Shown: positions 6,647 through 34,399 of the stretch, piece by piece
Numbering within the stretch: the first letter of the stretch is position 1
Layout of the letters: each line of letters starts with the position of its first letter
DNA from: Macrostomum lignano
Lineage: Eukaryota
Reading direction: 5' to 3'
Length of the DNA stretch: 44,899 bases
Assembly (NCBI GenBank): GCA_002269645.1
Contig: NIVC01004468.1
Location: 1-44,899, forward strand
Program-made: the position numbers and the translations under genes
Notes under the pieces: generated by a model
Told to the model about the DNA's origin: nothing
Databases searched by the model: none
Seen by the model: only the letters and a program-made list of their open reading frames with translations

Positions 6647-9493
6647 TCACTTGGCAACAGCCGACACAACGGTAGCAGCAGGGTTATTGGTGTAGAACTG
6701 GATGTTGTTCTCTGCCTCGGGCCTCGCGTACACTGCGTACAGCTTCGGAGCGAACAGGATCGACAGCAGCAGCGCGTGCGTGAGGCTGGACGAGAACGCA
6801 AGCAGCAACATTGCGGTAGTCAGAGAGCTGGCCGAAAGAGCGGACGGAACGAACGCCGACCACAAGAAGAGGCCGGACACTCCGCAAGCCAGGATGCACT
6901 TGGTGTCGTGAAAGTTGTCCGGAAGCGATCGGGTCTTCAGCGACAGGCCGCACGTGACAGTCAGGATCAGCAGGTTACAGCACAGCGGAGTCCAGAATGC
7001 CGTGGTCGCGATCGCGCAGTTCTTCTCCACGACTGGTCGGACCGAAGGATCGGTCACAATCTGTTTGAGCTCCGAGCTCAGTGGTCGGAACACGGTCACT
7101 CCGCTAAGCAGCAGGCACTGCAATGCACCGCATGGATGGGTTCTAATCTCATTTGCTGGTGCGTGTCATATGCTCGTAGCTACACATTTGTCCTACAGCA
7201 TGTCCTGCGTTTGTCCTACAGCATGTCCTGCATTTGTCCTACAGCATGTCCTACATTTGTCCAACAGCATGTCCTGAATTTGTCCTACAGCATGTCCTGC
7301 ATTTGTCCTACAGCATGTCCTGCATTTGTCCTACAGAATATCCTGCATTTGTCTTTAAAGCATGTCCTGAATTTGTCCTACAGCATGTCCTGCATTTGTC
7401 CTACAGAATTTCCTCACCATTCCAAAAATGACTGCGGCCAGCATCATCAGCATCGGCTTCTGTCGCGCGAGCCAAGGTACCGGACGACCCACTCTGGATG
7501 CAGAGAAGATCAGATGGACGCGAAGGGTCTTCACCAACTGACTCGCGTAGCAAGCAGTCAGGCTGAGCTGGAATGCGCAGTTCAAAGCATTGCACATTAC
7601 GTGCGAGCTGTCTACAGCGAACAGACCGAGACACGCTAGACCGAGGAGGTTCCCACACATGCACGTGACGGACAAGTGTATCGACGAGGCCTTGATGAGC
7701 TTGTGGTGTCGACGGTTGATGAACAGAGCGAGCACGACGACCAGGAAGATCGAGAGTAGAGCGAGACATGCCAGCAGCACAGGAAACTGCAGTCCGTCTC
7801 TCCACGCGTACACCGGTATCGACTCGCAGCTCAGCCGGTCTTGACTGGGCCAGTGAAACTCCGAACACGACAGACACGACTTGCCATCATCCGACACGAT
7901 CTCCTGCTTGAAGCACGGCTTGCACGTAAAGCAGCAAGCATCTGTCTCCAACTTGATTTCGCCAGCACTGCACGGAGCACTGCAGAATGACTTTGGCAGT
8001 TCCGACTGAGCTGCATGCTGATCGGAGCTCGAGTTCTGCCACCATCGAATAGGTGTGAGGTCGCTCAACGTAAGACCGGCTGACTCCGTCCACGTTCCGA
8101 CCTTCACCAACTGACCGTCCGGCTGCTCCTGACGAATCTCGTAGGCCGGCGATCCGTCACCGCTCGAGTCGAAGCTCACGTTTCCGGTTCGCATGAAAGG
8201 GAAGCTGGAGTTCGCAAGCAGCTTCATCACCTTCGGACCTGTGACACATGCACTCACAGCCGTAACATTCGGCCACTTTGTCGCGCAATCGATCAGAGCG
8301 ACACGCTCGATACACGAGACCAGAATGTTGATTGAGTCCAGAAGTCTTGCGACAGGAGCCACCTCAGAGTCGATTGATAGACTCGACTTTGAGCCGACTC
8401 TACAACTGCCGTCAGAGCAGCACGATGCAGCGCTATCCAATGTGCAGTTGAAGAGAAGTCGGAGCAGTTGTTCGCCGAACGGATAGCCGAGGACCTCAGA
8501 CCCGTTCAGTGAGTGGTAGAACTGGATGAGGTCGGGCGTGGCGAACTTTGTAAACGAGGTATAGATCGCACCCGTGGTGAAATGTTTGTAGGCAACGGAA
8601 TTCGCATCCGTTGTGATGATAACTCCTTTTCTGCTACTTATCACTTGGAGTACAAACTCAGGCATTTTGCTAAACGTGTCAAACATAAGAAAGCCACGCA
8701 GGTGGGGTACTGACTCATCTGGGTGTCGACATCCTCCTTTGTCAAAAACATGTTGATAGGTAAAGTGAAAGCCACGCACACTGTCTGACCGAATTTGCTA
8801 CTTTGCTGAAGCAGTAGACGCGTGTTCTGGAGCAGTCCTCTACCGTACACATCGTCTCTGTGCACGATTCCTACCATGGTCCAGTTGAAGTACTGCACGA
8901 GGTGTACGACTGCCTTGGCCTGGTAGCTGTCAGGAGCTACTTGACGGAACACGTTGGGGTAGAGCGTCTTGTCCGACAGAGCATCGCTGCTGCACTCGTT
9001 TCCGACCTGCGGCATGGAGTAGAGAGACAGCTGACGGGACACCAGCTGCGTCTCGCTGCTACGCCAGCCCGACACGACGGCATGAACGAAGTAGAACTTT
9101 TCTCCGAGGCTGGACACTACCTGGTCGCAGAATCCGGCAGCCGCATCAAGGCCGGTCGGGTGTGTCCATGCGGCCTTATCCGCTTCAGCATGTCCACCAG
9201 ACGACGGTCCAGGTAGCACGGATCAAGATGGAGCAGACCGAGGCGGAGATTGCGACTGGTCCATTTCGCATTGATGAGTTTAGCAGCGTAGTGCGGTGCC
9301 AGATTGCGCAGAAAAATTTGTTCGCTTATCATTGAATTGTGAGTGTCACAGTATTTATTCACACTTTGCAGAACGGCTAAGTTGATGAGGCCGTTCGGGA
9401 CGCATAGCACCTGTCCAGGGTGGTACTCTACATTCTGGCTGTAACTGTGTGCAAAAGATAAAGCGCAACAACTGTGGTTGCTGAGAGGGCCAT
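6647..9493 (-). CDS. Class C GPCR (mGluR-like; VFT-CRD-7TM), copy 1, 2 exons; three 1-bp frameshifts as assembled
   Basis: Exon 1 is 9493-7418, the intron 7417-7118 and exon 2 7117-6647. Motifs: LDPC, PQV..CSSDALSDK, PDSYQA, DVYG, TDA, CRD (FCSAPC..CCFTC.PC..C..C), KTRSLPDNF, FAPKLY. One base is missing in the A-run at 9453-9456, at 9171 and at 8703/8704. Restoring them gives a 2079-nt exon 1, the same length as corrected copy 2 (about 849 aa). Confidence 0.9.
7185..7407. repeat. 23-bp intronic minisatellite (TCCTACAGCATGTCCTGCATTTG)n, ~9-10 units, GPCR-1 intron
   Basis: Direct tandem units visible. The same repeat occurs in the introns of GPCR-2 and GPCR-3. Confidence 0.95.
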
Positions 9494-9829
9494 CGTTGCT
9501 AAAAATTTGCTAGTTTTTTTCCGTTAAGACAGAAGAAAGAGGCAGTCCGTTTTGGCAGTTTAATTTTATGTTGAGCCCGAGACTGCCAGCAATTGGCTGC
9601 TGGCCAACCCGTGGGCGCCTTTCATCGGTTCAATTTTTATAGGCTCCTATTGTGCGACTCTGATGGAGATGGTTTCTGTCGTGGAACCGGATAGAGCTGG
9701 CTGACGAAGGTTTTTAGCTGAGTGATGTATGCGATCTTGGCTTTTACCAGAGTGTCAAACAGTCTAAGAGGAAATATAATTTACTAGCGTATGCAACCCA
9801 ATAGGTAGCTATAAATTTGTCTCTTCGTT

Positions 9830-10420
9830 TGCGGATACAGGGCCATAAGGTCTAACGCAAACACTCAACTCATGATCCTTCCGATCTCTCTCGGCCTCAT
9901 CAACCACTCATCAGTCTCTGCGACAGTTAACCAGGTCCAACCAGCTACAGGTGAGAGCTCGCCAAAAGTAAACAGCCCTGTCCATTGTTCAAGTTTGGCC
10001 AGATAAAACAGAGGAAGAGAGCGAAAAAGATCTTTTAGCCTAAAACAGGAAAATTTAGTGAGCCAGCAAATATCGTATCAGCATGGCATTCCCCCTATTG
10101 GGCCTGAGCTCTAGCAGGCCGGTCATCAGGCCCTTTGCGCATGATGCAGCAGATTCGGACAATGAAGAGCAAAGGCTGGATGAATGCTCCTCTCAGTCAT
10201 TGCTTCACCGGTGTCATTTGCTATGTCCCATTTAGAATAGAGCTTGGCCGAATGATTTTTGCTAGCCAAGTTTGCAGCTCATTGCGGGTGATTCTGAGTA
10301 TTACTTGGGATTAACTTGGATGTAAAAAGTCTGATATATGCCAACACTGATGACTTTGCGGCACCCAAAACAAAGCAACTCGAAAACCTACAAAATGGTT
10401 TAATACAAACGACCAAATGC
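9830..10420 (+). mobile_element. Highly degenerate non-LTR retrotransposon RT remnant
   Basis: Broken frames give YLGLT(L)DVKSL (like KYLGxTLDxxL) near 10305-10335. No intact ORF remains. Confidence 0.3.
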
Positions 10421-11352
10421 TTGTTCCTGTCTTAGCGGGTGTAGCTCGTACTCAAAGTTTTACTTTTACCTGTTTTAATTAGTTTAAAAAGTTACTCGAG
10501 ACAATTGTGTCGCTTAGGCCACTCTATTGTGGGATCGTTTCGTGGTGTGGCAGTTCGGTCCTGTAACAGTTTTTTATATGACAGCTTGGTCATGTAACCT
10601 TCTTTCGTGTGACATTTCGGTCATAACCCTTTTGTCGTGTGGCAATTTGGTCATGTACTCGTATATCACCAAAACTGCATCAGTCAGCGATATTTGAAAA
10701 CTACACAATAACAAGAGAGTTTGAAAACTTATTGGTGAGAAAATATTTTGAACGCCTGTATGCAAGTTTCATGTGAACACTTAGCTAGATCAGAGCCGTG
10801 CGGCATTAGGCAGCTCCACCAGTATCGCAGCAGTACTGCTGTCGCAGATCTTGGGTGTTGATGTCAGCAGTTTTCGTGTGAGCTTGACGCTCTAAGTGCA
10901 AGCCAACTTCATCAGGCTGAATTTCTCCGTTTTTCGCTTGTGCAAACCATTAGGCTGGCAAGCACAATGAACTTCCGTTTTGCACTGGTCTTGCTGTCCT
11001 GAGATGATCTGTTGATTGTCGATGTTCGTGCTGCTGAGATCGTTGATGCTGCTTCTGCTGCTGCTGTTGTTTTTGTTGTTATTGACGGGCCCAGCTGGGT
11101 CACCTGGTCATTGGGCCGACGGGGACGGTCTAGCTGCAACATGGCACAGCCAGTCGTCATTGTCCCGCTCGCCTCTGGACAGGGGCCTTGCACCACCGCG
11201 TCGCCGCGCAAGTGTGCAGAGGGCATGTCGGCGAGCTTGCCACCAGGTCCACCAGGGTCAACCCCAGCGGAACCGTAATACCAGCTTTCGTGTCCGTAGC
11301 CAGCGGACCTTCCACGCCACGCCTGACAGTCCAGCACCGGCGGCCAGCCCCG

Positions 11353-14196
11353 ATGGGGTCTAGCCAGTGTCTGGAGCTGCTCAGAGCCCTGCTGGATGTG
11401 AGGCTGCTGCTGCTGCTGGTGTAAGCCGAACTAAGTTGGGTGTGCCTTAGACAGAGGCTAGCGTTCGCAACGTTGGCGCCTACTTTTTAACTTTGGTCCC
11501 CTCGCTCCAGGCTCACGTTGGGTCCTCTCGTTGCCGTCCAGCCTCGGCCAGGTTACACGACCAGGTGCCCTAGGCCTAGCCTAATTCCGGTTCCTAATCC
11601 TAATCCTATCAACATTTTCCTATGGCTCATAAGGCTATTCGTCATTTCGTAGGAAATTTTATTGTTCGCCAAAATACATTGAACAAAAGATCACTACAAG
11701 CTCGAATGTTTATTTTAGTTTATTTATTTGTCCGAGATTTCGTCAACCGGGGTAAAAAAGAGTCTGCTACAGCTTCTTGTAAATTGTTCTCTGGATTGTA
11801 CGAGGCGAGAATTCATATTTACTAGCCTCCCAAGTGAGTCGGGGCAGCAGTTGAAGCTGCGCTGAGTACATTGCACAAGGGGAGAGCGAGGTGCAGCGGA
11901 AAGCAAAGAGAGACGCGTCGTCAGAGTTGACGATGCCCCTTGGCGTTTGAAAAGCACGCACCTGCAGTACAATAGCAACCCCCAACCCCGATCTAGCGAC
12001 CAGTGTACACACGTACACTACAAAGGTTAGAGAGCAGATCAGTGTGCAAGACAACCCTAGCCACGTACACCCGATGGAAGGCGCCGCAGTTACACTTGTC
12101 CTCTTTTGAATGCATGACTTTCATACCGCATGTAGCGAGGGTAAAGAAAGCATTAATACATTTGCTAGTGTATTAATGTTTGCACGGTAGACGTTAGGAT
12201 TGGACCCAGTGTGATACCAACCTCTTGTACTAGAGGTCTCAGGCTCGATTTTCAGGCTCGAGGAGTGACATCGAGGGCCAGCTGGGCATGGAGTGAGTAA
12301 CGTCTCCATATTACTATATTTTGTTAGTCAAACTGACGTAAAGAAAAGCACGAATTACTTATTGCCATTTCATATTTATTTGTAACTCTCCGTTCGGCCC
12401 GTAGGATCGAAATCATGAGCGAGATTTTCTACCAGCAACGCGGACCCAAATTCCTCCAGAGCAATTTTGATGGTGCTTCATTCACTACGAGGAAAATAGG
12501 GCAAAGCCAGGCGGCCCAACCCACCACTGGATAAGTGCCTCAGTGAGTGGTCGCCATCCAAAGCCGCATAAATCAGCTGTTCAAAGCAGACGACGGTCAC
12601 TAACTACATGCGATCTCCGCTTTCTTCAGAACCGCATCGGTATTCAGCAAGGCGCGCGCCAGTCTGTCAATAGGCTTTCAAGCTTTATTCACCATAATGC
12701 ACTTTTTCTCAGTTGACTTCTTGAAGACACTGTCCGTGAAGACGCCAATAAGTCATCAAGATTCATGAATAAAGTCATTTTTCAACGCAATACTGATGCA
12801 TAAAAATTGAGCCATAAAATCATTATTGATTCAATGTGCATTATGTTGAGCCGTGAGCCGAGCTACTCGTGTCAAAAGTTTATTACACTTAAATGAGAAT
12901 AAAATACACATTTCCACATGCAACCAGATAAACAACTGTAGGACGGTACGAGTACATCTGACGTACTCGCCACTAGCTGGTTTCGCGGGCAAAAGCACTC
13001 TGACTGTCCAAAGTTCTACTGGGCACCAATAGCTGCGACCAGCTGATGGAGTTGGCCAGCCGCGGCGACCGGGCGTCACGTTGACCCGCTGGCGAAGGAG
13101 ATGATGGAGCAGGGCGTGAAGCCTACATCGGAACACCCTTCCCGTGGAGTGGCGTCGCGGGGCGACCCGCTCCAATTGTTCCGGATCCACTCACACTTGT
13201 GAGAAGATAGCGCAATCACCAGAGACTCGGTCTACCGCTTCGGCCTAGATCTGAATGATAAATGTGCAGTGTGCGAGGAAACCCGATAGCGCTGTTCACC
13301 TCCTCATCGACTGCCCGGATTATCAACCGGCTCGTAGTCAGGTCTGGGGAGGTGGCTGCATCGACATAGACGACATCTTCAGAGACGCGAGCCTCATCTG
13401 CCGCTACCTTCGCAATGTGGGCCGCACGGACCCGCCCATTGACGATCTTGGCGGACGGACAGCCCCTGCCCCCTTGCCCGCGGGCGAGGACAGGCGGGAG
13501 TGAAGAGAGAAAGAGAGAGCAGGGTTTGAACTCAGAGTATCGGATGATTCCAGGCGAGATTCGGATCTTCCCATTTGGCAAGGCGTCAGATGGGGCCTGT
13601 AAGTTGGCTGGCAATTTACACCAGCTTTGCGCTTGATGTTGACCTTACAATCTGATCACGGATGCGAACAGTTCCATCAGGCGCTGTCAGCCGAGAATAC
13701 TGCCCTGGGTCGGCTATGAGGTGCCTCTGGTGACCTCACTCTGCAAAACACACGAGTCCCCCGAGTTTACTTAGGTGGAAACTTTCTTGGACCAAGAAAT
13801 TATGCCTGCCGCGTGAGTTCGTCAACCATTGCAACAGCTCATGTGAAAAGAAATGGGCTCAGTGCTGAGCGCTTCTCATCGCTGTCTTGACAGAAAACAG
13901 TTTTAATCAGCAAATTTTAAAACGAGTCAAATACATATTTAGCAAATATGAACGGATGCTAAGCTGTACAGTAGCTACAGCTGATTTCACGTTGATTTGG
14001 ATTGCTTAGGCTCATCTGAAACTATCAGCCAAACTGCGAACTTCCAAAATCTTTTGATTCAGCACGTACGCTCGTATTTTAGATTTTTTCTTACTCATTA
14101 CAGCAGTTTTTGCGCTTTCAGTTTCTCTCCAACAGCCACACTGGCTGCCTGAGAACCCTGCAAGCTTCATCTAATGACGATATGGGATTTAGCTGA
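11353..14196 (+). pseudogene. PanK-like pseudogene, paralog of 1434-4330 with the same 6-exon layout
   Basis: Exon relics: ex1 ~11353-11456 (LELLRALLDVRLL...ALDRG); ex2 ending 12292 (GM-GA|gtgagt); ex3 12405-12651 (IEIMSEIFYQQRGPKFLQSNF...IQSRINQLFKADDGH*); ex4 ~12941-13598 (WFAGKS..VLLGTNSCDQLMELASRGDR..HVDPLAKEMMEQG / LNSEYRMIPGEIRIFPFGKASDGA|gtaag); ex5 from 13672 (PSGAVSRE..RVYLGGNF); ex6 14104-14196 (QFLRFQFLSNSHTGCLRTLQAS). Lesions: TAA at 12601, frameshifts, GT>GC donors at 11457 and 12652, and a LINE insertion. Confidence 0.85.
13115..13516 (+). mobile_element. 5'-truncated non-LTR retrotransposon 3' end (I/R1-group-type CCHC C-terminus) with 8-bp TSD
   Basis: TSD GAGCAGGG at 13107-13114 and 13517-13524. 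It encodes, with a frameshift, YRFGLDLNDKCAVCEET/DSAVHLLIDCPDYQPAR...ICRYLRNVGR, and has a GA-rich tail. Confidence 0.85.
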
Positions 14197-15198
14197 CCCT
14201 GATCACAGAATATACACAGAATAGCGATTCGGCAGTTCTCTATGAAAGCGAAAATAAATGCACTTGCACTACTAACGTTGTGAAGCTGATAAGTAGTTGC
14301 GATTTTTTTAACGCGAAGTTGAATGTAAAAGTCGAGCTCAAGATAGCCTTTGAAAGCTTTGAGTCGTCGTTTTGACGCTGCAGATGAATGCTGCGCTATC
14401 ATTGTAATTAATTTGTTCATAATGGTGCGTGCGCAAAGTCATGAGCAGTAGTAACAACTGTTATAACCTCATTGCCATATATATGTAAGCTAAAAAATAA
14501 AAGTAACAAACATATAACAACAGGTTAAGTTTTAGCCCTGCACGCAAGGCAGGAAATACCAGGCGCAACAGAAATTGCAAATCTCATGCAATCACACTCA
14601 TCCGCTTGAACTTCCTGATTGCTCACTGCAAAATGCTCGCCCATGCTTTCTCTCCTGAGCCAATCCTGCGCCCATTGCAGCAATGGTGTAAGCGCAGCTT
14701 CGAAAACAGCCTTGCAATGCCCATCACGCATCTCTCTGAGTGCTCTGCAGTGCAATGAGTCGCAATATATGGCCTGATGCCAATAATTTGCTGATTCTGT
14801 GTGACACACCAGCATGCATGAACTTTGGCACTTCCAGCAATTTGAATTAGCGTTCCATCTCAGTGACAGCTCTGATTGTAGAGTGTTCTACCTCCCTCAA
14901 AAAGTGATAAAATTGTTAACGTACTACTTACATAGTAGTAAGACAAGTAGCATGTATAAGAATAAGCGTTGAATCACATATATATTTTAATCAACCAATC
15001 AGAAGAGCGAAAAATCAGACATATTATTTTTAGCAACCAACCAATCACGTGTGACCTATATTTGTCAGTTCAAACCCCACCTACGATTCATCATTCGGCT
15101 TGCACCCGGATGAACCAATCAAAGATATCTAAAAATAGCTCAGCTACGGTAACAATCATGCGCGCTTACACTAGACTAGTTGCTTAACTTTCTACCCT

Positions 15199-15890: not shown

Positions 15891-15897
15891 TCCTTGA

Positions 15898-17139: not shown

Positions 17140-17272
17140 CTGGCTAGTCACCCGGTCTTCCTGTCATCGATTCTTCCAGTCGTACGGTTCTCCAGTCTTT
17201 TGATCTTCCTTCTGGTCTTCCAGTCTCCCGTTCTTCCAGTCTTCCATCTTCCAGTCTTCCGCTCTTCCAAGT
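17140..17272. repeat. Degenerate TCTTCCAG low-complexity repeat
   Basis: Repeated TCTTCC(A/T)G motifs. Confidence 0.6.
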
Positions 17273-17692: not shown

Positions 17693-20515
17693 CTAAGACC
17701 TTGATGCCATAACGGTAGTAGCAGGGTTATTGGTGTAGAACTGGATGTTGTTCTCTGCCTCGGGCCTCGCGTACACTGCGTACAGCTTCGGAGCGAACAG
17801 GATCGACAGCAGCAGCGCGTGCGTGAGGCTGGACGAGAACGCAAGCAGCAACATTGCGGTAGTCAGAGAGCTGGCCGAAAGAGCGGACGGAACGAACGCC
17901 GACCACAAGAAGAGGCCGGACACTCCGCAAGCCAGGATGCACTTGGTGTCGTGAAAGTTGTCCGGAAGCGATCGGGTCTTCAGCGACAGGCCGCACGTGA
18001 CAGTCAGGATCAGCAGGTTGCAGCACAGCGGAGCCCAGAACGCCGTGGTCGCGATCGCGCAGTTCTTCTCCACGACTGGTCGGACCGAAGGATCGGTCAC
18101 AAGCTGTTTGAGCTCCGAGCTCAGTGGTCGGAACACGGTCACTCCACTAAGCAGCAGGCACTGCAATGCCCGCATGGATGGGTTCTAATCTCATTTGCTG
18201 GTGCGTGTCATATGCTCGTAGCTACACATTTGTCCTACAGCATGTCCTGCGTTTGTCCTACAGCATGTCCTGCATTTGTCCTACAGCATGTCCTGAATTT
18301 GTCCTACAGAATATCCTGCATTTGTCTTTAAAGCATGTCCTGAATTTGTCCAACAGCATGTCCTGAATTTGTCTTTAAAGCATGTCCTGAATTTGTCCTA
18401 CAGCATCTCATGCATTTGTCCTACAGAATTTCCTCACCATTCCGAAAATGACTGCGGCCAGCATCATCAGCATCGGCTTCTGTCGCGCGAGCCAAGGTAC
18501 CGGACGACCCACTCTCGATGCAGAGAAGATCAGATGGACGCGAAGGGTCTTCACCAACTGACTCGCGTAGCAAGCAGTCAGGCTGAGCTGGAATGCGCAG
18601 TTCAAAGCATTGCACATTACGTGCGAGCTGTCTACAACGAACAGACCGAGACACGCTAGACCGAGAAGGTTCCCACACATGCACGTGACGGACAAGTGTA
18701 TCGACGAGGCCTTGATGAGCTTGTGGTGTCGACGGTTGATGAACAGAGCGAGCACGACGACCAGGAAGATCGTGAGTAGAGCGAGACATGCCAGCAGCAC
18801 AGGAAACTGCAGTCCGTCTCTCCACGCGTACACCGGTATCGACTCGCAGCTCAGCCGGTCTTGACTGGGCCAGTGAAACTCCGAACACGACAGACACGAC
18901 TTGCCATCATCGGACACGATCTCCTGCTTGAAGCACGGCTTGCACGTAAAGCAGCAAGCATCTGTCTCCAACTTGATCTCGCCAGCACTGCACGGAGCAC
19001 TGCAGAATGACTTTGGCAGTTCCGACTGAGCTGCATGCTGATCGAGCTCGAGTTCTGCCACCATCGAATAGGTGTGAGGTCGCTCAACGTAAGACCGGCT
19101 GACTCCGTCCACGTTCCGACCTTCACCAGCTGACCGTCTGGCTGCTCCTGACGAATCTCGTAGGCCGGCGATCCGTCACCGTTCAAGTCGAAGCTCACGT
19201 TTCCGGTTCGCATGAAAGGGAAGCTGGAGTTCGCAAGCAGCTTCATCACCTTCGGGCCTGTGACACATGCACTCACAGCCGTAACATTCGGCCACTTTGT
19301 CGCGCAATCGACCAGAGCGACGCTCTCGATACACGAGACCAGAATGTTGATTGAGTCCAGAAGTCTTGCGACAGGAGCCACCTCAGAGTCGATTGATAGA
19401 CTCGACTTTGAGCCGACTCTGCAACTGCCGTCAGAGCAGCACAATGCAGCGCTATCCAATGTGCAGTTGAACAGAAGTCGGAGCAGTTGTTCGCCGAACG
19501 GATAGCCGAGGACCTCAGATCCGTTCAGCGAGTGGTAGAAGTGGATGAGGTCGGGCGTGGCGAACTTTGTAAACGAGGTATAGATGGCACCCGTGGTGAA
19601 ATGTTTGTAGGCAACGGAATTCGCATCCGTTGTGATGATAACTCCTTTTCTGCCACTTATCGCTTGGAGTAAGAATTCTGGAATGCTACTAAAGGTATCG
19701 AATACAAGAAAGCCACGCAGGTAGGGGTACTGACTCATCTGGGTGTCGACATCCTCCTTTGTCAAAAACATGTTGATAGGTAAAGTGAAAGCCACGCACA
19801 CTGTCTGACCGAATTTGCTACTTTGCTGAAGCAGTAGACGCGTGTTCTGGAGCAGTCCTCTACCGTACACATCGTCTCTGTGCACGATTCCTACCATGGT
19901 CCAGTTGAAGTACTGCACGAGGTCTACGACTGCCTTGGCCTGGTAGCTGTCGGGAGCTACTTGACGGAATACGTTGGGGTAGAGCGTCTTGTCCGACAGA
20001 GCATCGCTGCTGCACTCGTTTCCGACCTGCGGCATGGAGTAGAGAGACAGCTGACGGGACACCAGCTGCGTCTCGCTGCTACGCCAGCCCGACACGACGG
20101 CATGAACGAAGTAGAACTTTTCTCCGAGGCTGGACACTACCTGGTCGCAGAATCCGGCAGCCGCATCAAGGCCGGTCGGGTGTGTCCATGCCGGCCTAAT
20201 CCGCTTCAGCATGTCCACCAGACGACGGTCCAGGTAGCACGGATCAAGATGGAGCAGACCGAGGCGGAGATTGCGACTGATCCATTTTGCATTGATGTGT
20301 TTAGCAGCGTAGTGCGGTGCCAGATTGCGTAGAAAGATAGATTCTGTGAGCTTCGCTCCAGGTGTGTCGCAGTAGAACTGTGTGCTCTCTAATACGGCTA
20401 AATTAATTATTCCGCTTGCGATGCACAGTTGCTGTCCGGGAAGGTACGTGACAGTTTGAGATGCAAGTCCAAGAACTAGAGTATAAGCAATTGCAGCTGC
20501 TGTCAGTGAAGTCAT
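17693..20515 (-). CDS. Class C GPCR copy 2, 2 exons; one 1-bp frameshift at ~19044 as assembled
   Basis: Exon 1 is 20515-18438, the intron 18437-18161 and exon 2 18160-17693. It has a signal peptide MTSLTAAAIAYTLVLGLAS. GG>G at 19044 relative to copy 1 shifts the frame just before the CRD. Corrected length is about 848 aa. Confidence 0.9.
18227..18427. repeat. 23-bp intronic minisatellite, ~8-9 units, GPCR-2 intron
   Basis: Same unit as 7185-7407. Confidence 0.95.
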
Positions 20516-21342
20516 ACTTACTGTCTCTGCTACGAAGGGCGGATACTTAGCAGGATTTTTCTTATGACTTAAGTATCAAATCGGGAAGCCACGCCCATGC
20601 CCTCGGCAACCAATGAAGCGTGAGGCCTTAATCAGTGCAATCGATTGGCAACGTTTGGTTTCAATTTCTTCCGTCGTGCAAGCTCGATCTGCACAAGGAA
20701 TTTCAGAGCAATTAAAATTTAAACTCATGGATTTTCGAATAAAAGCCTTTAAGACTAGATTGATCGCAGCAGAGTATATTGATCGATGAGAATTATTGAC
20801 TGTGCTCTCAAAACTCAATTTGTTTCTGCTTCATGCACGAGCTCGCATTATTGCAAGAAGTGAAATCGAGGAGCATCAAAAGAAGGAAATCGTTGGTAAA
20901 TCTTTTAAAAACGTTTTTTGTTACATTTTTAAAACCCACAGGGATCAGCTTTTCAGCTACCTTTGATAAACGAAAAGAGTTGATAATTTTTCTCGTATTT
21001 TTTCTAGTCAGTCAATGTTTACGAAATCGATTCAGTGAGTTAAACCGACATATTCACAGGCCATTTGCTGTTGTCAACCCGAGGTTCTCGAGTCAATGAC
21101 ATTTAAGAAATCATTGACTGTCGCTCAGCTCAGCTCAAGGTGACAAGGTGATAAGATAACACGATTGGCTCTGTCACTCTGACACGCAACTGATAACGAC
21201 TGATTTCAACGTAAAATGCACCGCTATTGTTCTCACTTGGGAGTTCATGGTTGACAATATTTTGTTGAACCCTTTTTAATATGAGACGCTATGCCAGCCT
21301 TTAAGTACACGCTCTTCAGACAGTTCACGCATTCCACGATGC

Positions 21343-21641
21343 AATAATAATAATAATAAATAATTGGTTACACCTGCTCCAAAGGGCAGATGTGCAACCG
21401 ACAGCTCAGCCGCAGCTGAAGGCTGCTTACGGCTGTTCAGTTTAGGAATTGGGGGTCGCCACACACACCCTAAACTACCCCAGCGAGTTCTGGTGCCCAT
21501 TTTACAGCTGGGTGAACTGAAGCAATACAGAGTTCAGCGTCTTGCTCAAGGACACAAATTTTTCCGAGTGGGTCGAGAATCGAACCCCCGACCTTTCAGT
21601 CGTGAGTCCAACGCTCCAAAAACTAGACTAAAACCCCTCAC
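21343..21641 (-). mobile_element. tRNA-derived SINE with CORE-like central domain and (TTA)n tail
   Basis: The minus strand has a tRNA-like head with B-box GGTTCGATTCT. The plus strand reads CCCATTTTACAGCTGGGTGAACTGAAG..CTTGCTCAAGGACAC, resembling the MIR/CORE segment. An (AAT)n run lies at 21343-21363. Confidence 0.75.
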
Positions 21642-22544
21642 TAGGCTACAACCCCGATGTAACTGTAGAAATTTTTTGTGAACATGCGCTTGGGCTAAAT
21701 TAACAAACAATTAAAATTAAGACTCCCAGTTCTCATCGACTATTTGAATACGGTTTAGCTTTGAATTTTATAGAACAAAAAATTGTTATTAATTGTAATT
21801 TATACTTAATTTTTGCTTTTTCGACCACTAATTTCACTCTCTCTGACTAGAGGCTGTGGAGATATCAGGAGCTTCCTTCGCCAGGCAGTATAGCCCAGGG
21901 TTTTACCGAGAGCTGCATGATTTTATCACGACTCTACAAGCTGACTAAATCCATGTTGTAACAGCTGATTCAATTTTCGAGTTCACACGAGAAGAAAATG
22001 TAGCTGGCGTGGCTTGTACACGTATGCTGGGGTCGAATTTTAGGGAATTTTATACAGGATAATCTACTGTAAAATTGGGAGTTGCCCTCAAAGATGTCAA
22101 GAGGCAGACGGACATAAAAGAAGGGGGTTCCGAACGGGTGACTACTGACAGACGGGTGAAGGACAGCGTCTGCAACCTTTGACCGCCAAGCAGGAAATAT
22201 CGAGTGCCTTCCTTGAACCTCGAGAGCCAATTCAATCAATTTTAGCGTTGAGACAGTTTCAGTGGCTTTGTCGCCAAATTGAGACATTGAGAGTAACTAT
22301 TCATTCCAAGATGACTGAGCAGATATCAGCAAGTACAAGATAATTTTTCAATGCAATCGATTAGTCTGATGGAGCCATCAACTCTTAAAATCTATAAAGA
22401 TATCTTCCTGGCAACGACAAACATTATCATTATTTCTTTGCGTGTCAATGTCTTTTTGACCATGCGCCTAATTTACTTCAGTACCTCCTCAAGCTCTGAA
22501 GTTTGAGCCCTTTTCTTGGGGACGATAGATTTTGATAACTCCAT

Positions 22545-24600
22545 TGCCCTACTTAATTACTTAACTCGTAGGTACTACTTAATTACTACTGACGAAGGGC
22601 ACAGGCACCAATCGCAACCCCAAGCTAACACAGAATTAAAGACGCTAGCCTCGGGCTGCGCCCACCCGGCGTCTGTAATCTTCATCCGGCCGGTGTCCCG
22701 GACGAATGCGCACAGGTCACGGATCCGGTCCAGGCTGTCCAGGGTGGTCAGCTCGTCCAGCCTTAGCGGGCATTCGAGATGGTGTCTCCGCGCTTCGTTG
22801 AAGTGCGGGCAGAAGGTGACGTGGTGCGCGGCAGTTCTGGGTTAAATGGGAGAGCAGTTTTTTCTCTTTTCTTAAATATGTCTCTGGAAGAAGCCAAGGT
22901 CAGTGATGGCCATGGACATCTTCCTGAGGTCAGTTTACTCTAGGAGATTAGGTGTTTATGGCAGGCATTGCCGTTCGTGTTTGCCATTATTCCGAGCAGT
23001 GCAGCTGGTGTTGATGTCCTAAAAATTTGTGAGTGGCGCAGTTGACGGATGATTTCGGGGCAGGCAGCTTGATCGACGGGTGCGCTCTACCCGGGATGCT
23101 GCCTCGTTTGGCGAGTTGATCCAACAGCTCACTGCCAAGGATGTTGTTGTGGCCTGGTTTCCAGAGCACGTTGATCTTTTTAAGGATCGCTAGCTTTAGC
23201 TTTGTACAGCTGCTTTTAACATTGATTTATGGCCATGACTTCGGATTGAAAAACCGAGATGAAGGCTCTCTTGCAGGATCGCCTCACCCTTATGGAAAAC
23301 GGCGATGCCCGCACCGGCCATGCTATCGCACAGGATCCGTCAGTGAATCAGTGGGTGCCCTGACTTCTCCCGGTTAACGCCCACATCCAGTGGGTGGCTA
23401 CCTCGCGGTGGGATGGTGTACCTGAGTCTTTTCCTGGGATGAGCGAGGGGTTTACAGACCCACCTACAGTACGTACAGGTTGAGGTGGATGTGTTGAAGA
23501 TCGCAACGGATATAATCCAGGTGGGGAATAAGCGTCCTCTCAGGGATAAAGCCGAGGGGAGTTAGAGAGTTAGTAATGGCTTTATCACAGATTAAGCGCG
23601 TGGCACCTCTTATCGCCTCAGCTCGGATAACCAGGTGCAGCGGAATTGTTACGTTTGTGGAAGAATTTGAAGACGAAGACTTAGGAAGATTTGAATTGTA
23701 GTATTTTATTTGCTGCAGCGGCTCGTAGCGCTTGTATTCCTTTTAATAAAGAAGCTATCGAATCTTAAAACAAAAGAAAGATACAGTTGCATTGAGTCCC
23801 TAGGAACCATACCGGTAGACTAATAAATAAGCTTAGAAATATAAAGAAGATGTCAGCAGATCAAATATGCAACAGGAGGCATGTTGAGGATGGTGTTGAG
23901 CCCCTCGTATGGGGTAGATGAGTTCGCATGATGGCTCCGCGAGAGTGCATCCCTAGATTTTGTTTCCATGACTAGGGAGATGCCCCTAGCATTGATGGTA
24001 AGGTTCCACATGCTCCACTTCCGCTTCGTGGTGAAGATAATGGCCACAGTCGTGGCGGTGCTAATATAGCTTTTTGCAAGCCATTTGATACTACGAGCAA
24101 GCAATTTAATAATCAGTGGCTCAAAGATGCCGAGCTGCTCATTGTCCTAGAGGAAGTCGTCCATGTGGGTGACGGTGCCTTCCATCTGGGCGTCAGTCAG
24201 TGTCCCGCTGGCCGCGCGTACACAAATCTTATCTAGAGGCTCAGCCGCGACCTTGGCGTAAGAGCTGGCCGTCTCTCTACCCACGGAGCGCTTCGGATCC
24301 AGAGGGGCAATGATACGGTCTTCCAGCTTCTGGGCAGTGCTGGGGGCCGTGCTGGCCGCGCCATCGCGCTGCGTGATGGCATCGCCACCTAGGTCTCCAC
24401 TGGTGGGAATAGAAGTTTCCCTGCTTGGGGTAGCATCCGCGCGAGGTACGTGGAGAGAATAGCCTCCTAGTTGGAGGTTTGGTGGATTTTTGAACCCCCC
24501 TCCCGACCGCAGGAGCATGTAATTCAAAATCCACAAAAATGGCTGAAATGGGGAAGAGAAGATTGTTAGAAATTAATAAAAAACAGTTCGGCGCCTGGAT
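22545..24600 (-). mobile_element. Internally deleted RNase H-bearing non-LTR retrotransposon (R1/LOA/I-group-like)
   Basis: Minus-strand order: ORF1-like SYAKVAAEPL..; post-RT thumb PLHLVIRAEAIRGATRL (~23590-23640); RNase H TDGS..GAG..SEVMAI..WKPGHNNILGSELLDQLAKRG (~23100-23330); C-terminal [19 protein letters not shown]. No endonuclease or RT core is present. The GC-rich 24600-25030 segment may be its 5' UTR. Confidence 0.75.
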
Positions 24601-26609
24601 ATACCCCCAGTCAGCCAGAGGCTAACACCTGCGAACTCCGACGAACTCCGACGAACAGAAGGAAGGCTTTGGGTCACCGTCTTTAACCAGGGTTTCCTTC
24701 CTGACCAAGCTCCGGAAGGCGCCTGGTCCACACTCTACAAGATGAGGGGCGGGTCGGGTGCAGGGTCGGGTTCACAATGCCAGGTCGGGTTGACTGTCAG
24801 CACTGCTTCCCCTCTTCCACAGGTCCGGCACTTGTGAACCCTTTCACTATTCACCTTGCAGCCTACCCCAAGAATAGGCAGCGGGGGGGACCCCGTCGCC
24901 CACCAGTAGAGCGAAAGGAAGGCGAGCTCGCCTTCGGAAAAGGCGAAAAGCTGGCAGATGTTACAGAGTCCCTCAATTTGCAGGCGCCCTTAGCTCTCTT
25001 CATTACCCTAAGAGGTACTTTTGTACTTTGAAGTTGGATTCACAAAGGAAGATTTATCTCGTTCTTCTCTGTGTTAAAACTCGCCATAACTTTCGGCTTA
25101 AAATACGCAGAAAACCGTTGCTCAAACGTATTTTGCTTAAGGAATAGCATGAAACATTGTACGGGCTAATATGGTAGCTCCTAGTTTTGATCCATCATAA
25201 ACATCGCAATTTGATCCTATTCGGAGTGTCATATATGTGAGATTATGGCTTAACAACTTCAACTAACAACCCATCTTGTCGTGAATGTGGATGCATTGAC
25301 CTACTCGTAGTACTCGTAGATTTGAAATGCATCTTTAATCGCAAATACACATGGGAATTGCGACAGCTTAGCTCCTGGTTTAAATCCTGCAGCGCCCATG
25401 ACGATCAATTTCAAGCTTTTCCTGCTCGTCGAGGTTTTATCACAGGCTTGAGTAGTTTAAGCTTAACTAACTCAAATTTCTGGGCGCAACTGATAGATTT
25501 CTTGCTGCTTCACTTCATACGTGTATCAAGAAATTCAATCTGATAAATGGCTTGCAATAAGCAACCGTTAAAAGGTGGCGCTACGAGCGCTCACCACTGC
25601 ACATTGCACAAGCATGGACTATACTGAGGGAAGGACAATGTCAATATTTTAATAACTCATTCAGTGGTTATTCTCTCTCCCTTTAGTCGCTATTCTCGCT
25701 AAATTTCTGTCAACTTTTAATGTCAATTGTGCAAAAATGTGTTCGCAATACACATAGGAGATCGACTTAATCACGGAAATGCTGCTCAGGAACACCACCT
25801 TGAGACAGTGATAGGCCGAAAGGGCTGATTGGATCTTCGGATGGTAAGATATTCTACGTTCATAAGTTATAAATCTCATATTGAAACATCAAGAATATTT
25901 CCTGCAATATCTGCTGCAGCAATTAACTTTTTTACTACATGTCTCTACCGAAGATTGCAGTGACGTGACACCACATAGCAAAATCCAATATCCATCAACT
26001 CTCAAACCCGTGATTGCTTAGTAAGGGTGGGGAAAATCTCTGATCGATAAGGTAAAATGTTACAAAGCATGGATTTAATTTTCGGTTTCGTCCAGACCTA
26101 ACAGATGTGACTATTCAGCTGGAATATCAGAAAGGAACGCTCGATAAATGAGAAATGCAAATTCATCTCTCATCTTTCATCAATTCACTCTACGCAGGGA
26201 GTAGACAGTCGAATTGCGCTGAAACTTTGCTCATTCTGCCTGGAATGCTGAGCCAGATCCGATGTTAGTCGCAAATCTATTATTGCAAGCTGAAACTTGT
26301 GAACCAGCGCACGCTGTAGGAACAGCGTTCTGACCATTACCGTAATGAAACTGCAGCGAAGCACGCGAATCAATATCCTGATAAAACCGTGCCCACGTTT
26401 CAGCTTTATCACAACCCGTTCCCCAATATTCTGGTCAAAAATCTGATTGGGTCAAAAAAGTTTCGACAGTATGAAGCCGGACAGACATCTCTTTAGGCCA
26501 AATATAAAAAACTGCACGACTTTACCGAGAAAAATGCATTCTTGACGCCTCGTACAGGCCCGTGAAGCAGTTAACCGTCTTGACAAAACGAGTCGAAAGT
26601 CCTACTAAC

Positions 26610-29538
26610 ATGGTATCTTGGATAACCAGCCGTATCTTTGTATACACGTTTTTATTGAGCACTCTGGCAGCTCCATCGTCTGAACAGCAACTGCAAAAGC
26701 AGCAGCTGAGCTGCCATTCAGGCAGCCTGTTCAGCTTGGCTGTGGTGCAGACCTCCCGATACCAGTGCAACTCGCCAGCGAATGTCCTGACGGAAGTCGA
26801 GTTTCTTCGGTCACTAACTCCGATCTATGCATTAAGGTTGACCAACAAGCGTCTTAAAGGCACTCTGCCGTCAACGCTAGCAGCACATCCTGCCATTGGA
26901 ATGGTGTTTTTGGATACCTGTCTTGACCAGCAGGCCACCGTGAGCCTCGCCAAGCACTTACGACCAGCTGGGCTATCAGGAATTTCCTCCGCAAACCTCT
27001 GTAACCTGGTTATACCGCTCCTGGGTGCAAACTTCTACCCGGTGCATGCCGTGGCCGCTGGCTGGTACAGCAGCACCACTCAGCTGGTGTCCACCTTGAT
27101 TTCTGCGCACAGAATCCCGCAGCTTGCCACAGAGGCTAGCAGCGATGCCCTGTCAGATAAGGTCGAGTTCCCCAATGTCTACCGGCTGGTTCCACCAGAC
27201 AGCTACCAGGCAAAAGCTGCTGTCGATCTCATTCTACGACTCAATTGGACATACATTGGCATACTGTACCGAGATGATGTGTATGGGCGAGGCTTGTTGC
27301 AGAGCACACGTCTGCTTCTGCAGTCGGCTCAGCTCTCTGGAAGTAACAAAAGCGTTTGCATCGCCTTTATGTCAGCCATCAACACTTTCACGCCCGTGTC
27401 TGAAGTTTTACAGACGATTCGGGAACGAAAACACCTGAAAGCTTTTTTGATTTATGAACTCTTCGAACATCTACCTGAACCAATTCTTACTGAAGTTTTT
27501 AACGAGGGAGGAATTATTGTAACCTCAGACACAAATACAGTGCCCTACAAAAAGTTCACACAAGGTGCTCTCTACATCTCCTTCCCATCATTTTCCACGC
27601 CCGACCTCATCCAGTTCTACCACTCGCTGAACGGATCTGAGGTCCTCGGCTATCCGTTCGGCGAACAACTGCTCCGACTTCTCTTCAACTGCACATTGGA
27701 TAGCGCTGCATTGTGCTGCTCTGACGGCAGTTGTAGAATCGGCTCAAAGTCGAGTCTATCAATCGACTCTGAGGTTGCTCCTGTCGCAAGACTTCTGGAC
27801 TCAATCAACATTCTGGTCTCGTGTATCGAGCGTATCGCTCTGGTTGATTGCGCGACAAAGTGGCCGAATGTTACGGCTGTGAGTGCATGTGTCACAGGTC
27901 CGAAGGTGATGAAGCTGCTTGCGAACTCCAGCTTCCCTTTCTTGAGAACCGGAAACGTGAGCTTCGACTTGAACGGTGACGGATCGCCGGCCTACGAGAT
28001 TCGTCAGGAGCAGCCAGACGGTCAGCTGGTGAAGGTCGGAACGTGGACGGAGTCAGCCGGTCTTACGTTGAGCGACCTCACACCTATTCGATGGTGGCAG
28101 AACTCGAGCTTCGATCGGCATGCAGCTCAGTCGGAACTGCCAAAGTCATTCTGCAGTGCTCCGTGCAGTGCTGGCGAGATCAAGTTGGAGACAGATGCTT
28201 GCTGCTTTACGTGCAAGCCGTGCTTCAAACAGGAGATCGTGTCCGATGATGGCAAGTCGTGTCTGTCGTGTTCGGAGTTTCACTGGCCCAGTCAAGACCG
28301 GCTGAGCTGCGAGTCGATACCGGTGTACGCGTGGAGAGACGGACTGCAGTTTCCTGTGCTGCTGGCATGTCTCGCTCTACTCACGATCTTCCTGGTCGTC
28401 GTGCTCGCTCTGTTCATCAACCGTCGACACCACAAGCTCATCAAGGCCTCGTCGATACACTTGTCCGTCACGTGCATGTGTGGGAACCTTCTCGGTCTAG
28501 CGTGTCTCGGTCTGTTCGTTGTAGACAGCTCGCACGTAATGTGCAATGCTTTGAACTGCGCATTCCAGCTCAGCCTGACTGCTTGCTACGCGAGTCAGTT
28601 GGTGAAGACCCTTCGCGTCCATCTGATCTTCTCTGCATCGAGAGTGGGTCGTCCGGTACCTTGGCTCGCGCGACAGAAGCCGATGCTGATGATGCTGGCC
28701 GCAGTCATTTTCGGAATGGTGAGGAAATTCTGTAGGACAAATGCATGAGATGCTGTAGGACAAATTCAGGACATGCTTTAAAGACAAATGCAGGAAATTC
28801 TGTAGGACAAATGTAGGACATACTGTAGGACAAATGCAGGACATGTTGTAGGACAAATGCAGGACATGCTGTAGGAAAATTGCAAGACATACTGTAGGAC
28901 GAATACAGGACATACTGTAGGACAAATGCAGGACATGTTGTAGGACAAATGCAGGACATGCTGTAGGAAAAATGCAGGACATGCTGTAGGAAAAATGTGT
29001 AGCTATGAATATATGACAGGCATCTGAAATGAGATTAGAACCCATCCATGCGGTGCATTTATTTCAGTGCCTGCTGCTTAGTGGAGTGACCGTGTTCCGA
29101 CCACTGAGCTCGGAGCTCAAACAGCTTGTGACCGATCCTTCGGTCCGACCAGTCGTGGAGAAGAACTGCGCGATCGCGACCACGGCGTTCTGGGCTCCGC
29201 TGTGCTGCAACCTGCTGATCCTGACTGTCACGTGCGGCCTGTCGCTGAAGACCCGATCGCTTCCAGACAACTTTCACGACACCAAGTGCATCCTGGCTTG
29301 TGGAGTGTCCGGCCTCTTCTTGTGGTCGGCGTTCGTTCCGTCCGCTCTTTCGGCCAGCTCTCTGACTACCGCAATGTTGCTGCTTGCGTTCTCGTCCAGC
29401 ATCACGCACGCGCTGCTGCTGTCGATCCTGTTCGCTCCGAAGCTGTACGCAGTGTACGCGAGGTCCGAGGCAGAGAACAACATCCAGTTCTACACCAATA
29501 ACCCTGCAACCATATCTACTACTCCAACTATGCAGTAG
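26610..29538 (+). CDS. Class C GPCR copy 3, intact, 2 exons, 859 aa
   Basis: Exon 1 is 26610-28718, the intron 28719-29067 (gtgagg...tttcag) and exon 2 29068-29538. It has a signal peptide MVSWITSRIFVYTFLLSTLA, a VFT (FLDTC, PQLATEASSDALSDK, PPDSYQAKA), a CRD and a 7TM with KTRSLPDNF and FAPKLY. There are no frameshifts. Confidence 0.93.
28731..28998. repeat. 23-bp intronic minisatellite, ~11-12 units, GPCR-3 intron
   Basis: (GGACAAATGCAGGACATGCTGTA)n, the reverse complement of the unit in copies 1 and 2. Confidence 0.95.
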
Positions 29539-34203: not shown

Positions 34204-34399
34204 TTTGAACTGTTCTAAAAAAGCACTATTAGGCTATCCTGTGCAGCAGATATTAACGCTAAATTATAGCATGTACTTTAACCTATTTATTTTAAAGCTG
34301 CAGATGAACTTTACTGCCGTATCGAAATCGAGTCGCATGCGTCACCGTGGTACTTGAGTGCATGCACATTTGGCACCTCAGTTTATACAACCAAATACT

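What the first reader, a model, noticed from the sequence alone, without database searches (positions are those of the whole stretch)
6647..29538. Three class C GPCRs with a homogenised constant half and divergent ligand-binding N-termini
Seen: GPCR-3 is only moderately similar to copies 1 and 2 over its first ~330 residues. It then switches abruptly at ~27595 (TPDLIQFY) to about 97-99% nucleotide identity, which runs through the distal VFT, CRD and 7TM to ~29507; the intron carries the same minisatellite. Tails and signal peptides are unique to each copy. In the shared block copy 3 alternates between copy-1 alleles (CCAGTTC, ACAGGTCC) and copy-2 alleles (GACTTGAAC, TTGTGCTGC). Established: VFT lobes carry the ligand site and the 7TM couples to G proteins. 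Inference: repeated gene conversion keeps one signalling module on several different sensing modules, a variable/constant chemoreceptor design. Copies 2 and 3 are head-to-head, so their constant blocks form ~1.9-kb inverted arms about 8 kb apart, which could favour conversion.
Basis: partly seen in the sequence, partly recalled or inferred. Interest (0 to 1): 0.72.

Follow-up and report, generated by a model that had tools for sequence, protein, structure and literature searches.

The report
Gene-converted cluster of mGluR-like receptors

Summary
Copy 3 (26610-29538, +) is about 45% identical in protein to copies 1 and 2 over its first 329 residues, with synonymous sites saturated. At 27594/27595 it jumps to 98-99% exon identity, which lasts to 29507. 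All three copies share a phase-0 intron with a 23-bp minisatellite, and heads and tails are unique. Only DNA exchange explains this: dS is 0.02-0.05 in the block, and 96-98% of conserved residues use the same codon, against 38% upstream.

New evidence: copies 1 and 2 each have a pantothenate-kinase-like gene downstream. Those two relics are collinear with dS about 1.7. The tandem duplication is therefore old, and the 97-100% receptor identity reflects concerted evolution. Divergence along the block is patchy, which implies several conversion tracts.

The "variable/constant chemoreceptor design" is not shown. Only two sensing-half types occur here. The copy 1-copy 2 block covers almost the whole gene, so there is no fixed module boundary. 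Copy 1 has three frame disruptions and copy 2 has one; only copy 3 is intact. Conversion of the signalling half with divergent ligand-binding halves is already documented for the TLR1 gene family. This is a new member of a known kind.

The parts
26610..28718 (+). Copy 3 exon 1: signal peptide, VFT, cysteine-rich domain (CRD), TM1 to the start of TM4. Intact ORF.
   Evidence: the donor ATG|GTGAGG sits at 28718/28719
28719..29067 (+). Copy 3 intron (phase 0) with a 23-bp minisatellite at 28722-28997 (12 units). Its 3' flank, 28998-29067, is about 11% diverged from c1=c2.
29068..29538 (+). Copy 3 exon 2: rest of TM4 through TM7, a short unique tail and the stop codon.
27595..29507 (+). Homogenised ('constant') block in copy 3, equivalent to c2 19560-17721 and c1 8541-6678. 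It covers the second part of VFT lobe 1, the CRD and the 7TM.
26610..27594 (+). Divergent N-half of copy 3 (residues 1-329): signal peptide, first part of lobe 1, and lobe 2. It is 45% identical in protein to c2, with synonymous sites saturated.
17693..20515 (-). Copy 2: exon 1 18438-20515, intron 18161-18437 (minisatellite 18228-18434), exon 2 17693-18160. A 1-bp gap at 19044/19045 in the VFT-CRD linker shifts the frame.
6647..9493 (-). Copy 1: exon 1 7418-9493, intron 7118-7417 (minisatellite 7185-7414), exon 2 6647-7117. It has three frame disruptions: between signal peptide and mature chain (about 9433-9440), a 1-bp gap at 9171/9172, and a 1-bp gap at 8704/8705.
6665..9314 (-). Copy 1 / copy 2 homogenised block (equivalent to 17708-20335), 96.6% identical, running from about codon 60 to 6 codons before the stop. 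The flanks are not alignable.
8635..8704 (-). Old-divergence island inside the c1/c2 block (equivalent to c2 19654-19723): 16 differences in 70 bp, flanked by 99-100% identity.
2792..4281 (+). Pantothenate-kinase-like (Pfam Fumble) exons downstream of copy 1. Used as a marker of the age of the duplication unit.
12397..14180 (+). Collinear, decayed paralogue (with in-frame stops) of the PANK-like gene, downstream of copy 2. It is 66% identical in nucleotides in the best stretches, with dS about 1.7.

Best explanation
The region is a cluster of three old paralogues of an mGluR-like class C GPCR. Copies 1 and 2 are in tandem, 11 kb apart. Copy 3 is inverted and head-to-head with copy 2. The cluster evolves by partial concerted evolution: recurrent interlocus (ectopic) gene conversion during recombinational repair copies stretches of a few hundred bp up to about 2 kb between copies.

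Where the copies still pair, they are kept at 97-100% identity, including synonymous sites and the intron. Where they have diverged too far, conversion no longer reaches and divergence continues; this applies to the first 329 codons of copy 3 versus copies 1/2, the first ~60 codons of copy 1 versus copy 2, and all flanks. That produces sharp breakpoints inside the coding sequence.

Shown here: the step in identity, its DNA-level nature, the old age of the duplicates, and the patchwork of ages. Inferred: the repair mechanism, the self-reinforcing boundary, and a possible role of selection.

Copy 3 encodes an intact 859-residue receptor that keeps the residues mGluRs use to hold the alpha-amino-acid moiety, so it probably senses an amino-acid-like ligand (inference). 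Copies 1 and 2 are frame-disrupted in this assembly. They are either young pseudogenes that still exchange sequence with copy 3, or victims of single-base assembly errors.
For: (1) Abrupt step. c3 versus c2 is 45% identical in protein with pS 0.80 upstream of 27595, but dS is 0.017-0.031 downstream. Identical codons at conserved residues are 38% upstream versus 98.2% (c2) and 96.5% (c1) downstream. The intron and its minisatellite are shared.

(2) The constant half is not intrinsically slow. It is 46-47% identical to the only closer relative found (P0001), the same as the N-halves (45%). The two N-half types are as far from each other as from P0001.

(3) The c1/c2 units are an ancient duplication. 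Collinear PANK-like exons downstream of each are 66% identical in nucleotides with dS about 1.7, and one is decayed. The receptor bodies, by contrast, are 96.6% identical overall and 100% over several hundred bp.

(4) Several tracts of different age:
- c2-c3: 12 differences in 366 bp (27595-27960) versus 3 in 921 bp (27961-28718 plus 29068-29230); Fisher P = 5e-5.
- c1-c2: 0 in 277 bp at the 3' end versus 27 in 1287 bp; P = 0.009.
- c1-c2 island: 16 in 70 bp versus 8 in 610 bp; P = 1e-11.
- Intron 3' flank, c3 versus c1=c2: about 11% versus 1-2% in exons; P = 1e-5 to 2e-4.
- GENECONV-like permutation fragments: P = 0.006 (c1-c3, 27614-27899) and P = 0.04 (c2-c3, 27970-28712). A separate permutation test of the longest c1-c2 run of concordant variable sites (in the 3' part of the block) gave P = 0.03.

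(5) GC3 is 0.67-0.75 in the block versus 0.55-0.59 in both N-halves. This fits GC-biased conversion but is weak evidence.

(6) Differences among copies inside the block are mostly synonymous (omega 0.19-0.36; c1-private changes are 12 synonymous to 7 non-synonymous), so the exchanged sequence evolved under constraint.
Against: Only three sequences from one assembly are available. There are no reads, no population data, no orthologous locus and no other genomic paralogues: two protein searches and a metagenome scan found nothing. Direction and number of events therefore cannot be fixed. The segment tests use post-hoc boundaries, and the permutation P values are modest (0.006-0.04). Fine-scale SNP mosaics and 1-bp indels in near-identical paralogues can also come from consensus polishing. 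A donor outside the window could account for some patches, such as the island and the intron flank.
Confidence: 0.8

Rival explanations
1. Adaptive modular design. Selection favours conversion that keeps one CRD/7TM signalling cassette on many divergent VFT sensing halves across a chemoreceptor family, and selection against conversion protects the ligand site.
For: The breakpoint at residue 330 lies just after the last lobe-2 strand (321-324), at the start of helix 331-339 in the AlphaFold model. It aligns three residues after the lobe-2-to-lobe-1 crossover of mGluRs (alignment; domain limits from memory). The variable part therefore holds most pocket residues. Omega in the block is below 1. 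The same pattern in the TLR1 family and protocadherins has been read as conversion plus selection.
Against: Only two N-half types occur here. The c1-c2 exchange includes nearly the whole VFT, with several hundred bp at 100% identity in lobe 1, so the VFT is not generally protected. Two of the three copies are frame-disrupted. A sharp boundary arises without selection once identity falls to about 55%. There are no expression or ligand data.
Confidence: 0.12
2. A single chimera-forming event. One partial duplication or unequal exchange grafted the 3' 1.9 kb of a c1/c2-type gene onto the copy-3 N-half, with ordinary divergence afterwards and no recurrent conversion.
For: One sharp in-frame junction at 27594/27595 and one at about 29507. 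In 27595-27960 the three copies are roughly equidistant at about 3%.
Against: Divergence along the block is strongly heterogeneous, and the closest pair changes from segment to segment (c2=c3, then c1=c2). The intron flank is three to ten times more diverged than the adjacent exons. c1 and c2 show the same kind of internally bounded block although their duplication is old, with dS about 1.7 in the neighbouring gene.
Confidence: 0.05
3. Assembly artefact. The shared block is a collapse or chimera, or cross-polishing of paralogues produced the mosaic and the frameshifts.
For: All four frame disruptions are net single-base losses in c1/c2, some in short runs (CC, GG, C4-5). Their concentration in c1/c2 versus about 5 kb of other intact coding sequence is not significant (about 0.07, my calculation). 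Fine SNP mosaics are what mis-assigned reads would give.
Against: Creating copy 3 by misassembly would need two misjoins at points where the true sequences share no similarity. Each copy has its own SNPs, its own minisatellite copy number (10, 8.9, 12) and its own intron flank. Junctions are in frame and flanks are unique and continuous. The window contains no N.
Confidence: 0.03

Closest known systems
TLR1 gene family: mammalian TLR1/TLR6, avian TLR1A/B and TLR2A/B (Huang et al. 2011, PMC3125219)
   Same: Neighbouring receptor paralogues in which gene conversion homogenises the C-terminal half while the ligand-binding N-terminal region stays divergent. Breakpoints lie inside the coding exon. 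Identical codons are 96-99% in the converted part versus 57-66% elsewhere; here the figures are 96-98% versus 38%.
   Different: A different protein family (LRR/TIR, single-pass) with an immune function, documented across many species with orthologue trees. Here there is one genome, a class C GPCR, an intron inside the tract, one inverted partner and two frame-disrupted copies.
Region-restricted gene conversion in clustered protocadherin variable exons, and RHD/RHCE (reviewed by Ohta 2010, PMC3966226)
   Same: Conversion homogenises one part of tandem paralogues while another part keeps its diversity. This is read as conversion opposed by selection or divergence.
   Different: Protocadherins get their true constant region by splicing to shared exons. 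Here each copy carries its own constant half, kept alike only by DNA exchange.
Metabotropic glutamate receptors (class C GPCRs)
   Same: The VFT + nine-Cys CRD + 7TM architecture. Best solved-structure matches are mGluR5/2/3 (E about 1e-52). Residues S154, S177, D197, Y225 and D307 align with the Ser/Thr/Asp/Tyr/Asp that bind the alpha-amino-acid group (residue roles from memory). The PKxY motif is present in TM7.
   Different: Only about 25-30% identity to any named mGluR, so it is not an orthologue of a known subtype. The gene has a single intron and the cytoplasmic tail is very short. The ligand is unknown.
Expanded class C chemoreceptor families (vertebrate V2R/OlfC)
   Different: The searchable library gave no report of domain-restricted conversion for V2Rs; one paper only raises homogenisation as a possibility. 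There is no evidence that the present genes are chemosensory.
Pseudogene-gene conversion pairs (e.g. CYP21A1P/CYP21A2, chicken Ig pseudo-V genes; from memory)
   Same: If c1 and c2 are real pseudogenes, an intact gene is exchanging sequence with broken neighbours.
   Different: Pseudogene status is unconfirmed, and no transfer of a defect or use for diversification is shown.

Membership tests
Class C (family 3) GPCR | Venus-flytrap ligand-binding domain of the periplasmic-binding-protein type | tested here: met
   Pfam ANF_receptor, E = 1.1e-26, residues 97-466. The AlphaFold model has pLDDT 82 with alternating beta/alpha lobes.
Class C (family 3) GPCR | Nine-cysteine domain between the VFT and the 7TM | tested here: met
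   Pfam NCD3G, E = 1.5e-10, residues 511-560. Nine Cys in residues 506-575.
Class C (family 3) GPCR | 7tm_3 heptahelical domain | tested here: met
   Pfam 7tm_3, E = 3.4e-33, residues 583-828. Seven long helices in the model. FAPKLY motif at residue 825.
mGluR subfamily (orthology to a named mGluR) | Closest to mGluRs and grouping with a specific subtype | tested here: inconclusive
   The best PDB hits are mGluRs (1e-52), ahead of CaSR (1e-33) and T1R (1e-24). Identity to named relatives is only 23-30%. No tree was made.
mGluR subfamily (orthology to a named mGluR) | Alpha-amino-acid binding signature (Ser, Thr, Asp, Tyr, Asp) | tested here: met
   S154, S177 (Thr to Ser), D197, Y225 and D307 are conserved in c1, c2, c3 and P0001. 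The residue roles are from memory and binding was not tested.
Concerted evolution by interlocus gene conversion | Segment-wise discordance of paralogue similarity that includes silent sites and introns | tested here: met
   pS 0.80 versus dS 0.02-0.05; codon identity 38% versus 96-98%; shared intron.
Concerted evolution by interlocus gene conversion | Duplication older than the similarity of the converted segment | tested here: met
   The PANK-like neighbours of c1 and c2 have dS about 1.7 and are 66% identical in nucleotides. The flanks are not alignable. The N-halves are as far from each other as from P0001.
Concerted evolution by interlocus gene conversion | Statistically supported tracts or a mosaic pattern | tested here: met
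   Permutation fragments with P = 0.006-0.04, runs test P = 0.028, heterogeneity tests P = 1e-11 to 0.009 with post-hoc segments.
Concerted evolution by interlocus gene conversion | Paralogues within a species more alike than orthologues between species | not testable with these tools
   No genome of this or a sister species could be reached.
Variable/constant receptor design (many sensing modules on one signalling module) | Several distinct variable modules joined to the same constant module | tested here: not met
   The window holds only two N-half types. c1 and c2 differ only in their first ~60 codons and one 70-bp island. Genome-wide this is not testable.
Variable/constant receptor design (many sensing modules on one signalling module) | A fixed module boundary shared by all members | tested here: not met
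   The c3 boundary is at codon 330. The c1/c2 boundary is at about codon 60 (9314/20335).
Pseudogene (copies 1 and 2) | Reading-frame disruption confirmed in the genome rather than only in the assembly | tested here: inconclusive
   Frame breaks are present in the assembly. However, private substitutions are mostly synonymous, and no reads are available.

The most novel reading that the evidence does not exclude
The three copies are the visible part of a larger family in this unidentified organism. In that family, selection-tolerated or selection-favoured conversion keeps one CRD/7TM cassette, plus the second part of VFT lobe 1, on many divergent VFT N-halves. Because class C receptors signal as dimers, this could keep 7TM/CRD dimer contacts and G-protein coupling interchangeable. 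Frame-disrupted copies would then serve as sequence reservoirs, or in the case of copy 2 as a secreted VFT-only product.
Probability: 0.1. Interest if true: 0.6.

Novelty: new member of a known kind. Interest (0 to 1): 0.3.

Why it matters
This is a clean, internally dated example of partial concerted evolution in a class C GPCR cluster. The neighbouring PANK-like relics give an independent clock. The example shows that trees built from full-length receptors in such families would be misleading, because the N-half and the C-half have different histories. It also shows that apparent 'recent duplicates' can be old. If copies 1 and 2 are true pseudogenes, the intact receptor is exposed to defects copied from its neighbours. 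The result does not open a new question: conversion of the signalling half next to divergent sensing halves is already documented for other receptor families.

Tried and rejected
- Purifying selection as the cause of the constant block was rejected. Silent sites and the intron are homogenised, and the block is no more conserved than the N-half when compared with P0001.
- Recent tandem duplication of c1/c2 was rejected. The flanks are not alignable and the co-duplicated PANK-like gene has dS about 1.7.
- A search for more copies in the window by tblastn found only the three.
- Searches for the organism or further paralogues gave nothing. The search for homologous proteins with the whole protein and with the constant VFT/CRD part returned no hits. 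The metagenome locus scan found none.
- The representative search gave only one relative above 32% identity: P0001, a UniParc entry fused to transposon-like sequence, with no organism named. The next named single-receptor hits are spiralian mGluR-like proteins and fused fish 'CASR' models at 26-31%. The source organism therefore stays unidentified.
- Rfam and tRNA scans of the window were empty.
Spatial clustering was tested instead.
Full report
WHAT IS THERE

The window is eukaryotic DNA: it has GT-AG introns, many minisatellites and a GC content of about 0.47. It holds three copies of one receptor gene.

- Copy 3 (c3), + strand: exon 1 26610-28718, intron 28719-29067, exon 2 29068-29538.
- Copy 2 (c2), - strand: exon 1 20515-18438, intron 18437-18161, exon 2 18160-17693.
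- Copy 1 (c1), - strand: exon 1 9493-7418, intron 7417-7118, exon 2 7117-6647.

Splice sites are identical in position and phase in all three copies (ATG|GTGAGG ... CAG|TGC).

The spliced c3 product is 859 residues. It carries Pfam ANF_receptor (residues 97-466), NCD3G (511-560) and 7tm_3 (583-828). Its closest solved relatives are mGluR5, mGluR2 and mGluR3 (E about 1e-52), ahead of CaSR and T1R. An AlphaFold model built on 45 sequences has mean pLDDT 82 and shows the expected VFT, beta-rich CRD and seven helices. Positions S154, S177, D197, Y225 and D307 align with the mGluR residues that hold the alpha-amino-acid moiety, and they are the same in all copies. The residue roles are from memory. 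The genes are therefore mGluR-like class C receptors. At 23-30% identity they are not orthologues of any named subtype.

THE OBSERVATION

A three-way alignment shows c3 at 50-63% nucleotide identity to c1/c2 up to 27594. From 27595 (codon 330, TPDLIQFY) to 29507 exon identity is 98.8% to c2 and 97.9% to c1. The intron carries the same 23-bp minisatellite, with 12, 8.9 and 10 units in c3, c2 and c1. Signal peptides and the last 9-13 codons are private to each copy. The c2 and c3 blocks are inverted arms of about 1.9 kb separated by 8.0 kb; c1 and c2 are direct repeats 11.04 kb apart.

WHY IT IS DNA EXCHANGE AND NOT CONSTRAINT

- Between c3 and c2 the N-half is 45% identical in protein, with pS 0.80 (saturated). 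In the block dS is 0.017-0.031, and 0.04-0.05 to c1.
- Among identical amino acids, 38% use the same codon upstream and 96.5-98.2% do so in the block. This is the same test used for the TLR1 family.
- The block is not an intrinsically slow region. Against P0001, the only closer relative in 1.8 billion representatives, it is 46-47% identical, like the N-halves at 45%. The two N-half types are as far from each other as from P0001.

A tblastx comparison of the flanks finds five collinear coding stretches downstream of c1 (2927-4279) and downstream of c2 (12535-14178). They belong to a pantothenate-kinase-like gene (Pfam Fumble). The second copy has in-frame stops. The stretches are 66% identical in nucleotides, with dS about 1.7.

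Units 1 and 2 are therefore an old tandem duplication of [PANK-like gene + receptor]. Yet the receptor bodies are 96.6% identical over 2653 bp, and 100% identical over several hundred bp. That is concerted evolution. The c1/c2 block also ends inside the coding sequence, at about codon 60 (9314/20335) and 6 codons before the stop.

MORE THAN ONE EVENT

With three sequences every variable site is a private change in one copy. What counts is where each copy's private changes cluster, and they do cluster (differences are listed in the order c1-c2 / c1-c3 / c2-c3):

- 27595-27960: the three copies are about equidistant (10 / 10 / 12 differences).
- 27961-28718: c2 and c3 are nearly the same (12 / 14 / 3).
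- 29068-29230: c2 equals c3 (5 / 5 / 0).
- 29231-29507: c1 equals c2 (0 / 4 / 4).
- Intron 3' flank (28998-29067): c3 is about 11% from c1=c2.

Inside the c1/c2 block, a 70-bp island (8635-8704) has 16 differences. About half the changed codons are synonymous (counted by hand from the alignment), so it is old.

Nominal tests give P from 1e-11 to 0.009 (the segments were chosen after inspection). Permutation tests give 0.006-0.04. At least three or four exchanges of different age and between different pairs are needed.

GC3 is higher in the block (0.67-0.75) than in either N-half (0.55-0.59). This would fit GC-biased conversion but is weak evidence.

c1 and c2 are not intact in this assembly.

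- c2 lacks one base at 19044/19045, in the VFT-CRD linker. It would terminate out of frame after the VFT.
- c1 has a frame shift between its signal peptide and the mature chain (about 9433-9440), a 1-bp gap at 9171/9172 and a 1-bp gap at 8704/8705.

c3, the LRR gene (30906-32645) and the lectin-like gene (37290-38051) are intact, but the contrast is not statistically decisive (about 0.07, my calculation). Private substitutions of c1 in the block are 12 synonymous to 7 non-synonymous. The copies were therefore under constraint until recently, or receive sequence from functional genes, or the indels are assembly errors. I cannot tell which.

MECHANISM

Shown: sharp, in-frame, homologous breakpoints; old duplicates; young patches.

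Inferred: double-strand-break repair uses a nearby paralogue as template, in either orientation. Tracts stop where homology stops. Once a segment has escaped and diverged to about 55%, it can no longer be converted, so the boundary maintains itself. Selection for different ligand pockets may have started the escape, but it is not needed to keep it.

The c3 breakpoint falls right after the last lobe-2 strand, at the crossover back into lobe 1 (mGluR domain limits from memory). The private part therefore holds most pocket residues. Lobe 1 is a composite of private and shared pieces.

COMPARISON AND VERDICT

Conversion of the signalling half with divergent sensing halves is documented for TLR1/TLR6 and the avian TLR1 and TLR2 pairs. 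Region-restricted conversion is documented for protocadherins and RHD/RHCE. I found no description of it for class C GPCRs in the searchable library, but the process is the same.

The 'variable/constant design' fails two of its own defining features here: there are only two module types, and there is no common boundary.

Noticed in passing
window 2792-4281 (+) and 12397-14180 (+): A pantothenate-kinase-like gene (Pfam Fumble) and a decayed collinear paralogue with in-frame stops, one downstream of each of GPCR copies 1 and 2. dS is about 1.7. They reveal an ancient ~10-11-kb tandem duplication unit.
   Followed up: yes
window 33579-33938 (+) and 42548-43360 (-): Two paralogous small signal-peptide/single-TM proteins in inverted orientation. 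They share a GNPFYY(D/E)xC motif and a juxtamembrane run of seven or more cysteines. Neither has a Pfam match. The second ORF runs into a 26-bp minisatellite.
   Followed up: partly
window 29986-30565, 34399-35007, 35849-36113, 42306-42990: An unusually high density of minisatellites with 24-30-bp units, in addition to the 23-bp array in the receptor introns. The 30-bp array has 20 units at 99% identity.
   Followed up: no
window 8635-8704 (c1) and 19654-19723 (c2): A 70-bp island of old divergence (16 differences) inside the otherwise 99-100% identical c1/c2 VFT region. It starts exactly at the c1 1-bp gap (8704/8705). It could be a patch imported from a paralogue outside the window.
   Followed up: partly
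window 30906-32645 (-) and 37290-38051 (-): An intact single-exon LRR type-I membrane protein with a proline-rich tail, and a secreted protein with a weak C-type-lectin match. They are neighbours of copy 3 and unrelated to the finding.
   Followed up: partly
window 19044/19045 (c2): If the 1-bp gap is real, copy 2 would encode a signal peptide plus a complete VFT followed by about 54 out-of-frame residues. That would be a secreted VFT-only product rather than a receptor.
   Followed up: no
P0001 (UniParc UPI0007A15616), residues 1-1200: The only relative at 46% identity is a 2024-residue gene model. Its N-terminal 1200 residues look like GC-rich spurious translation that includes a reverse-transcriptase-like stretch.
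   Followed up: partly
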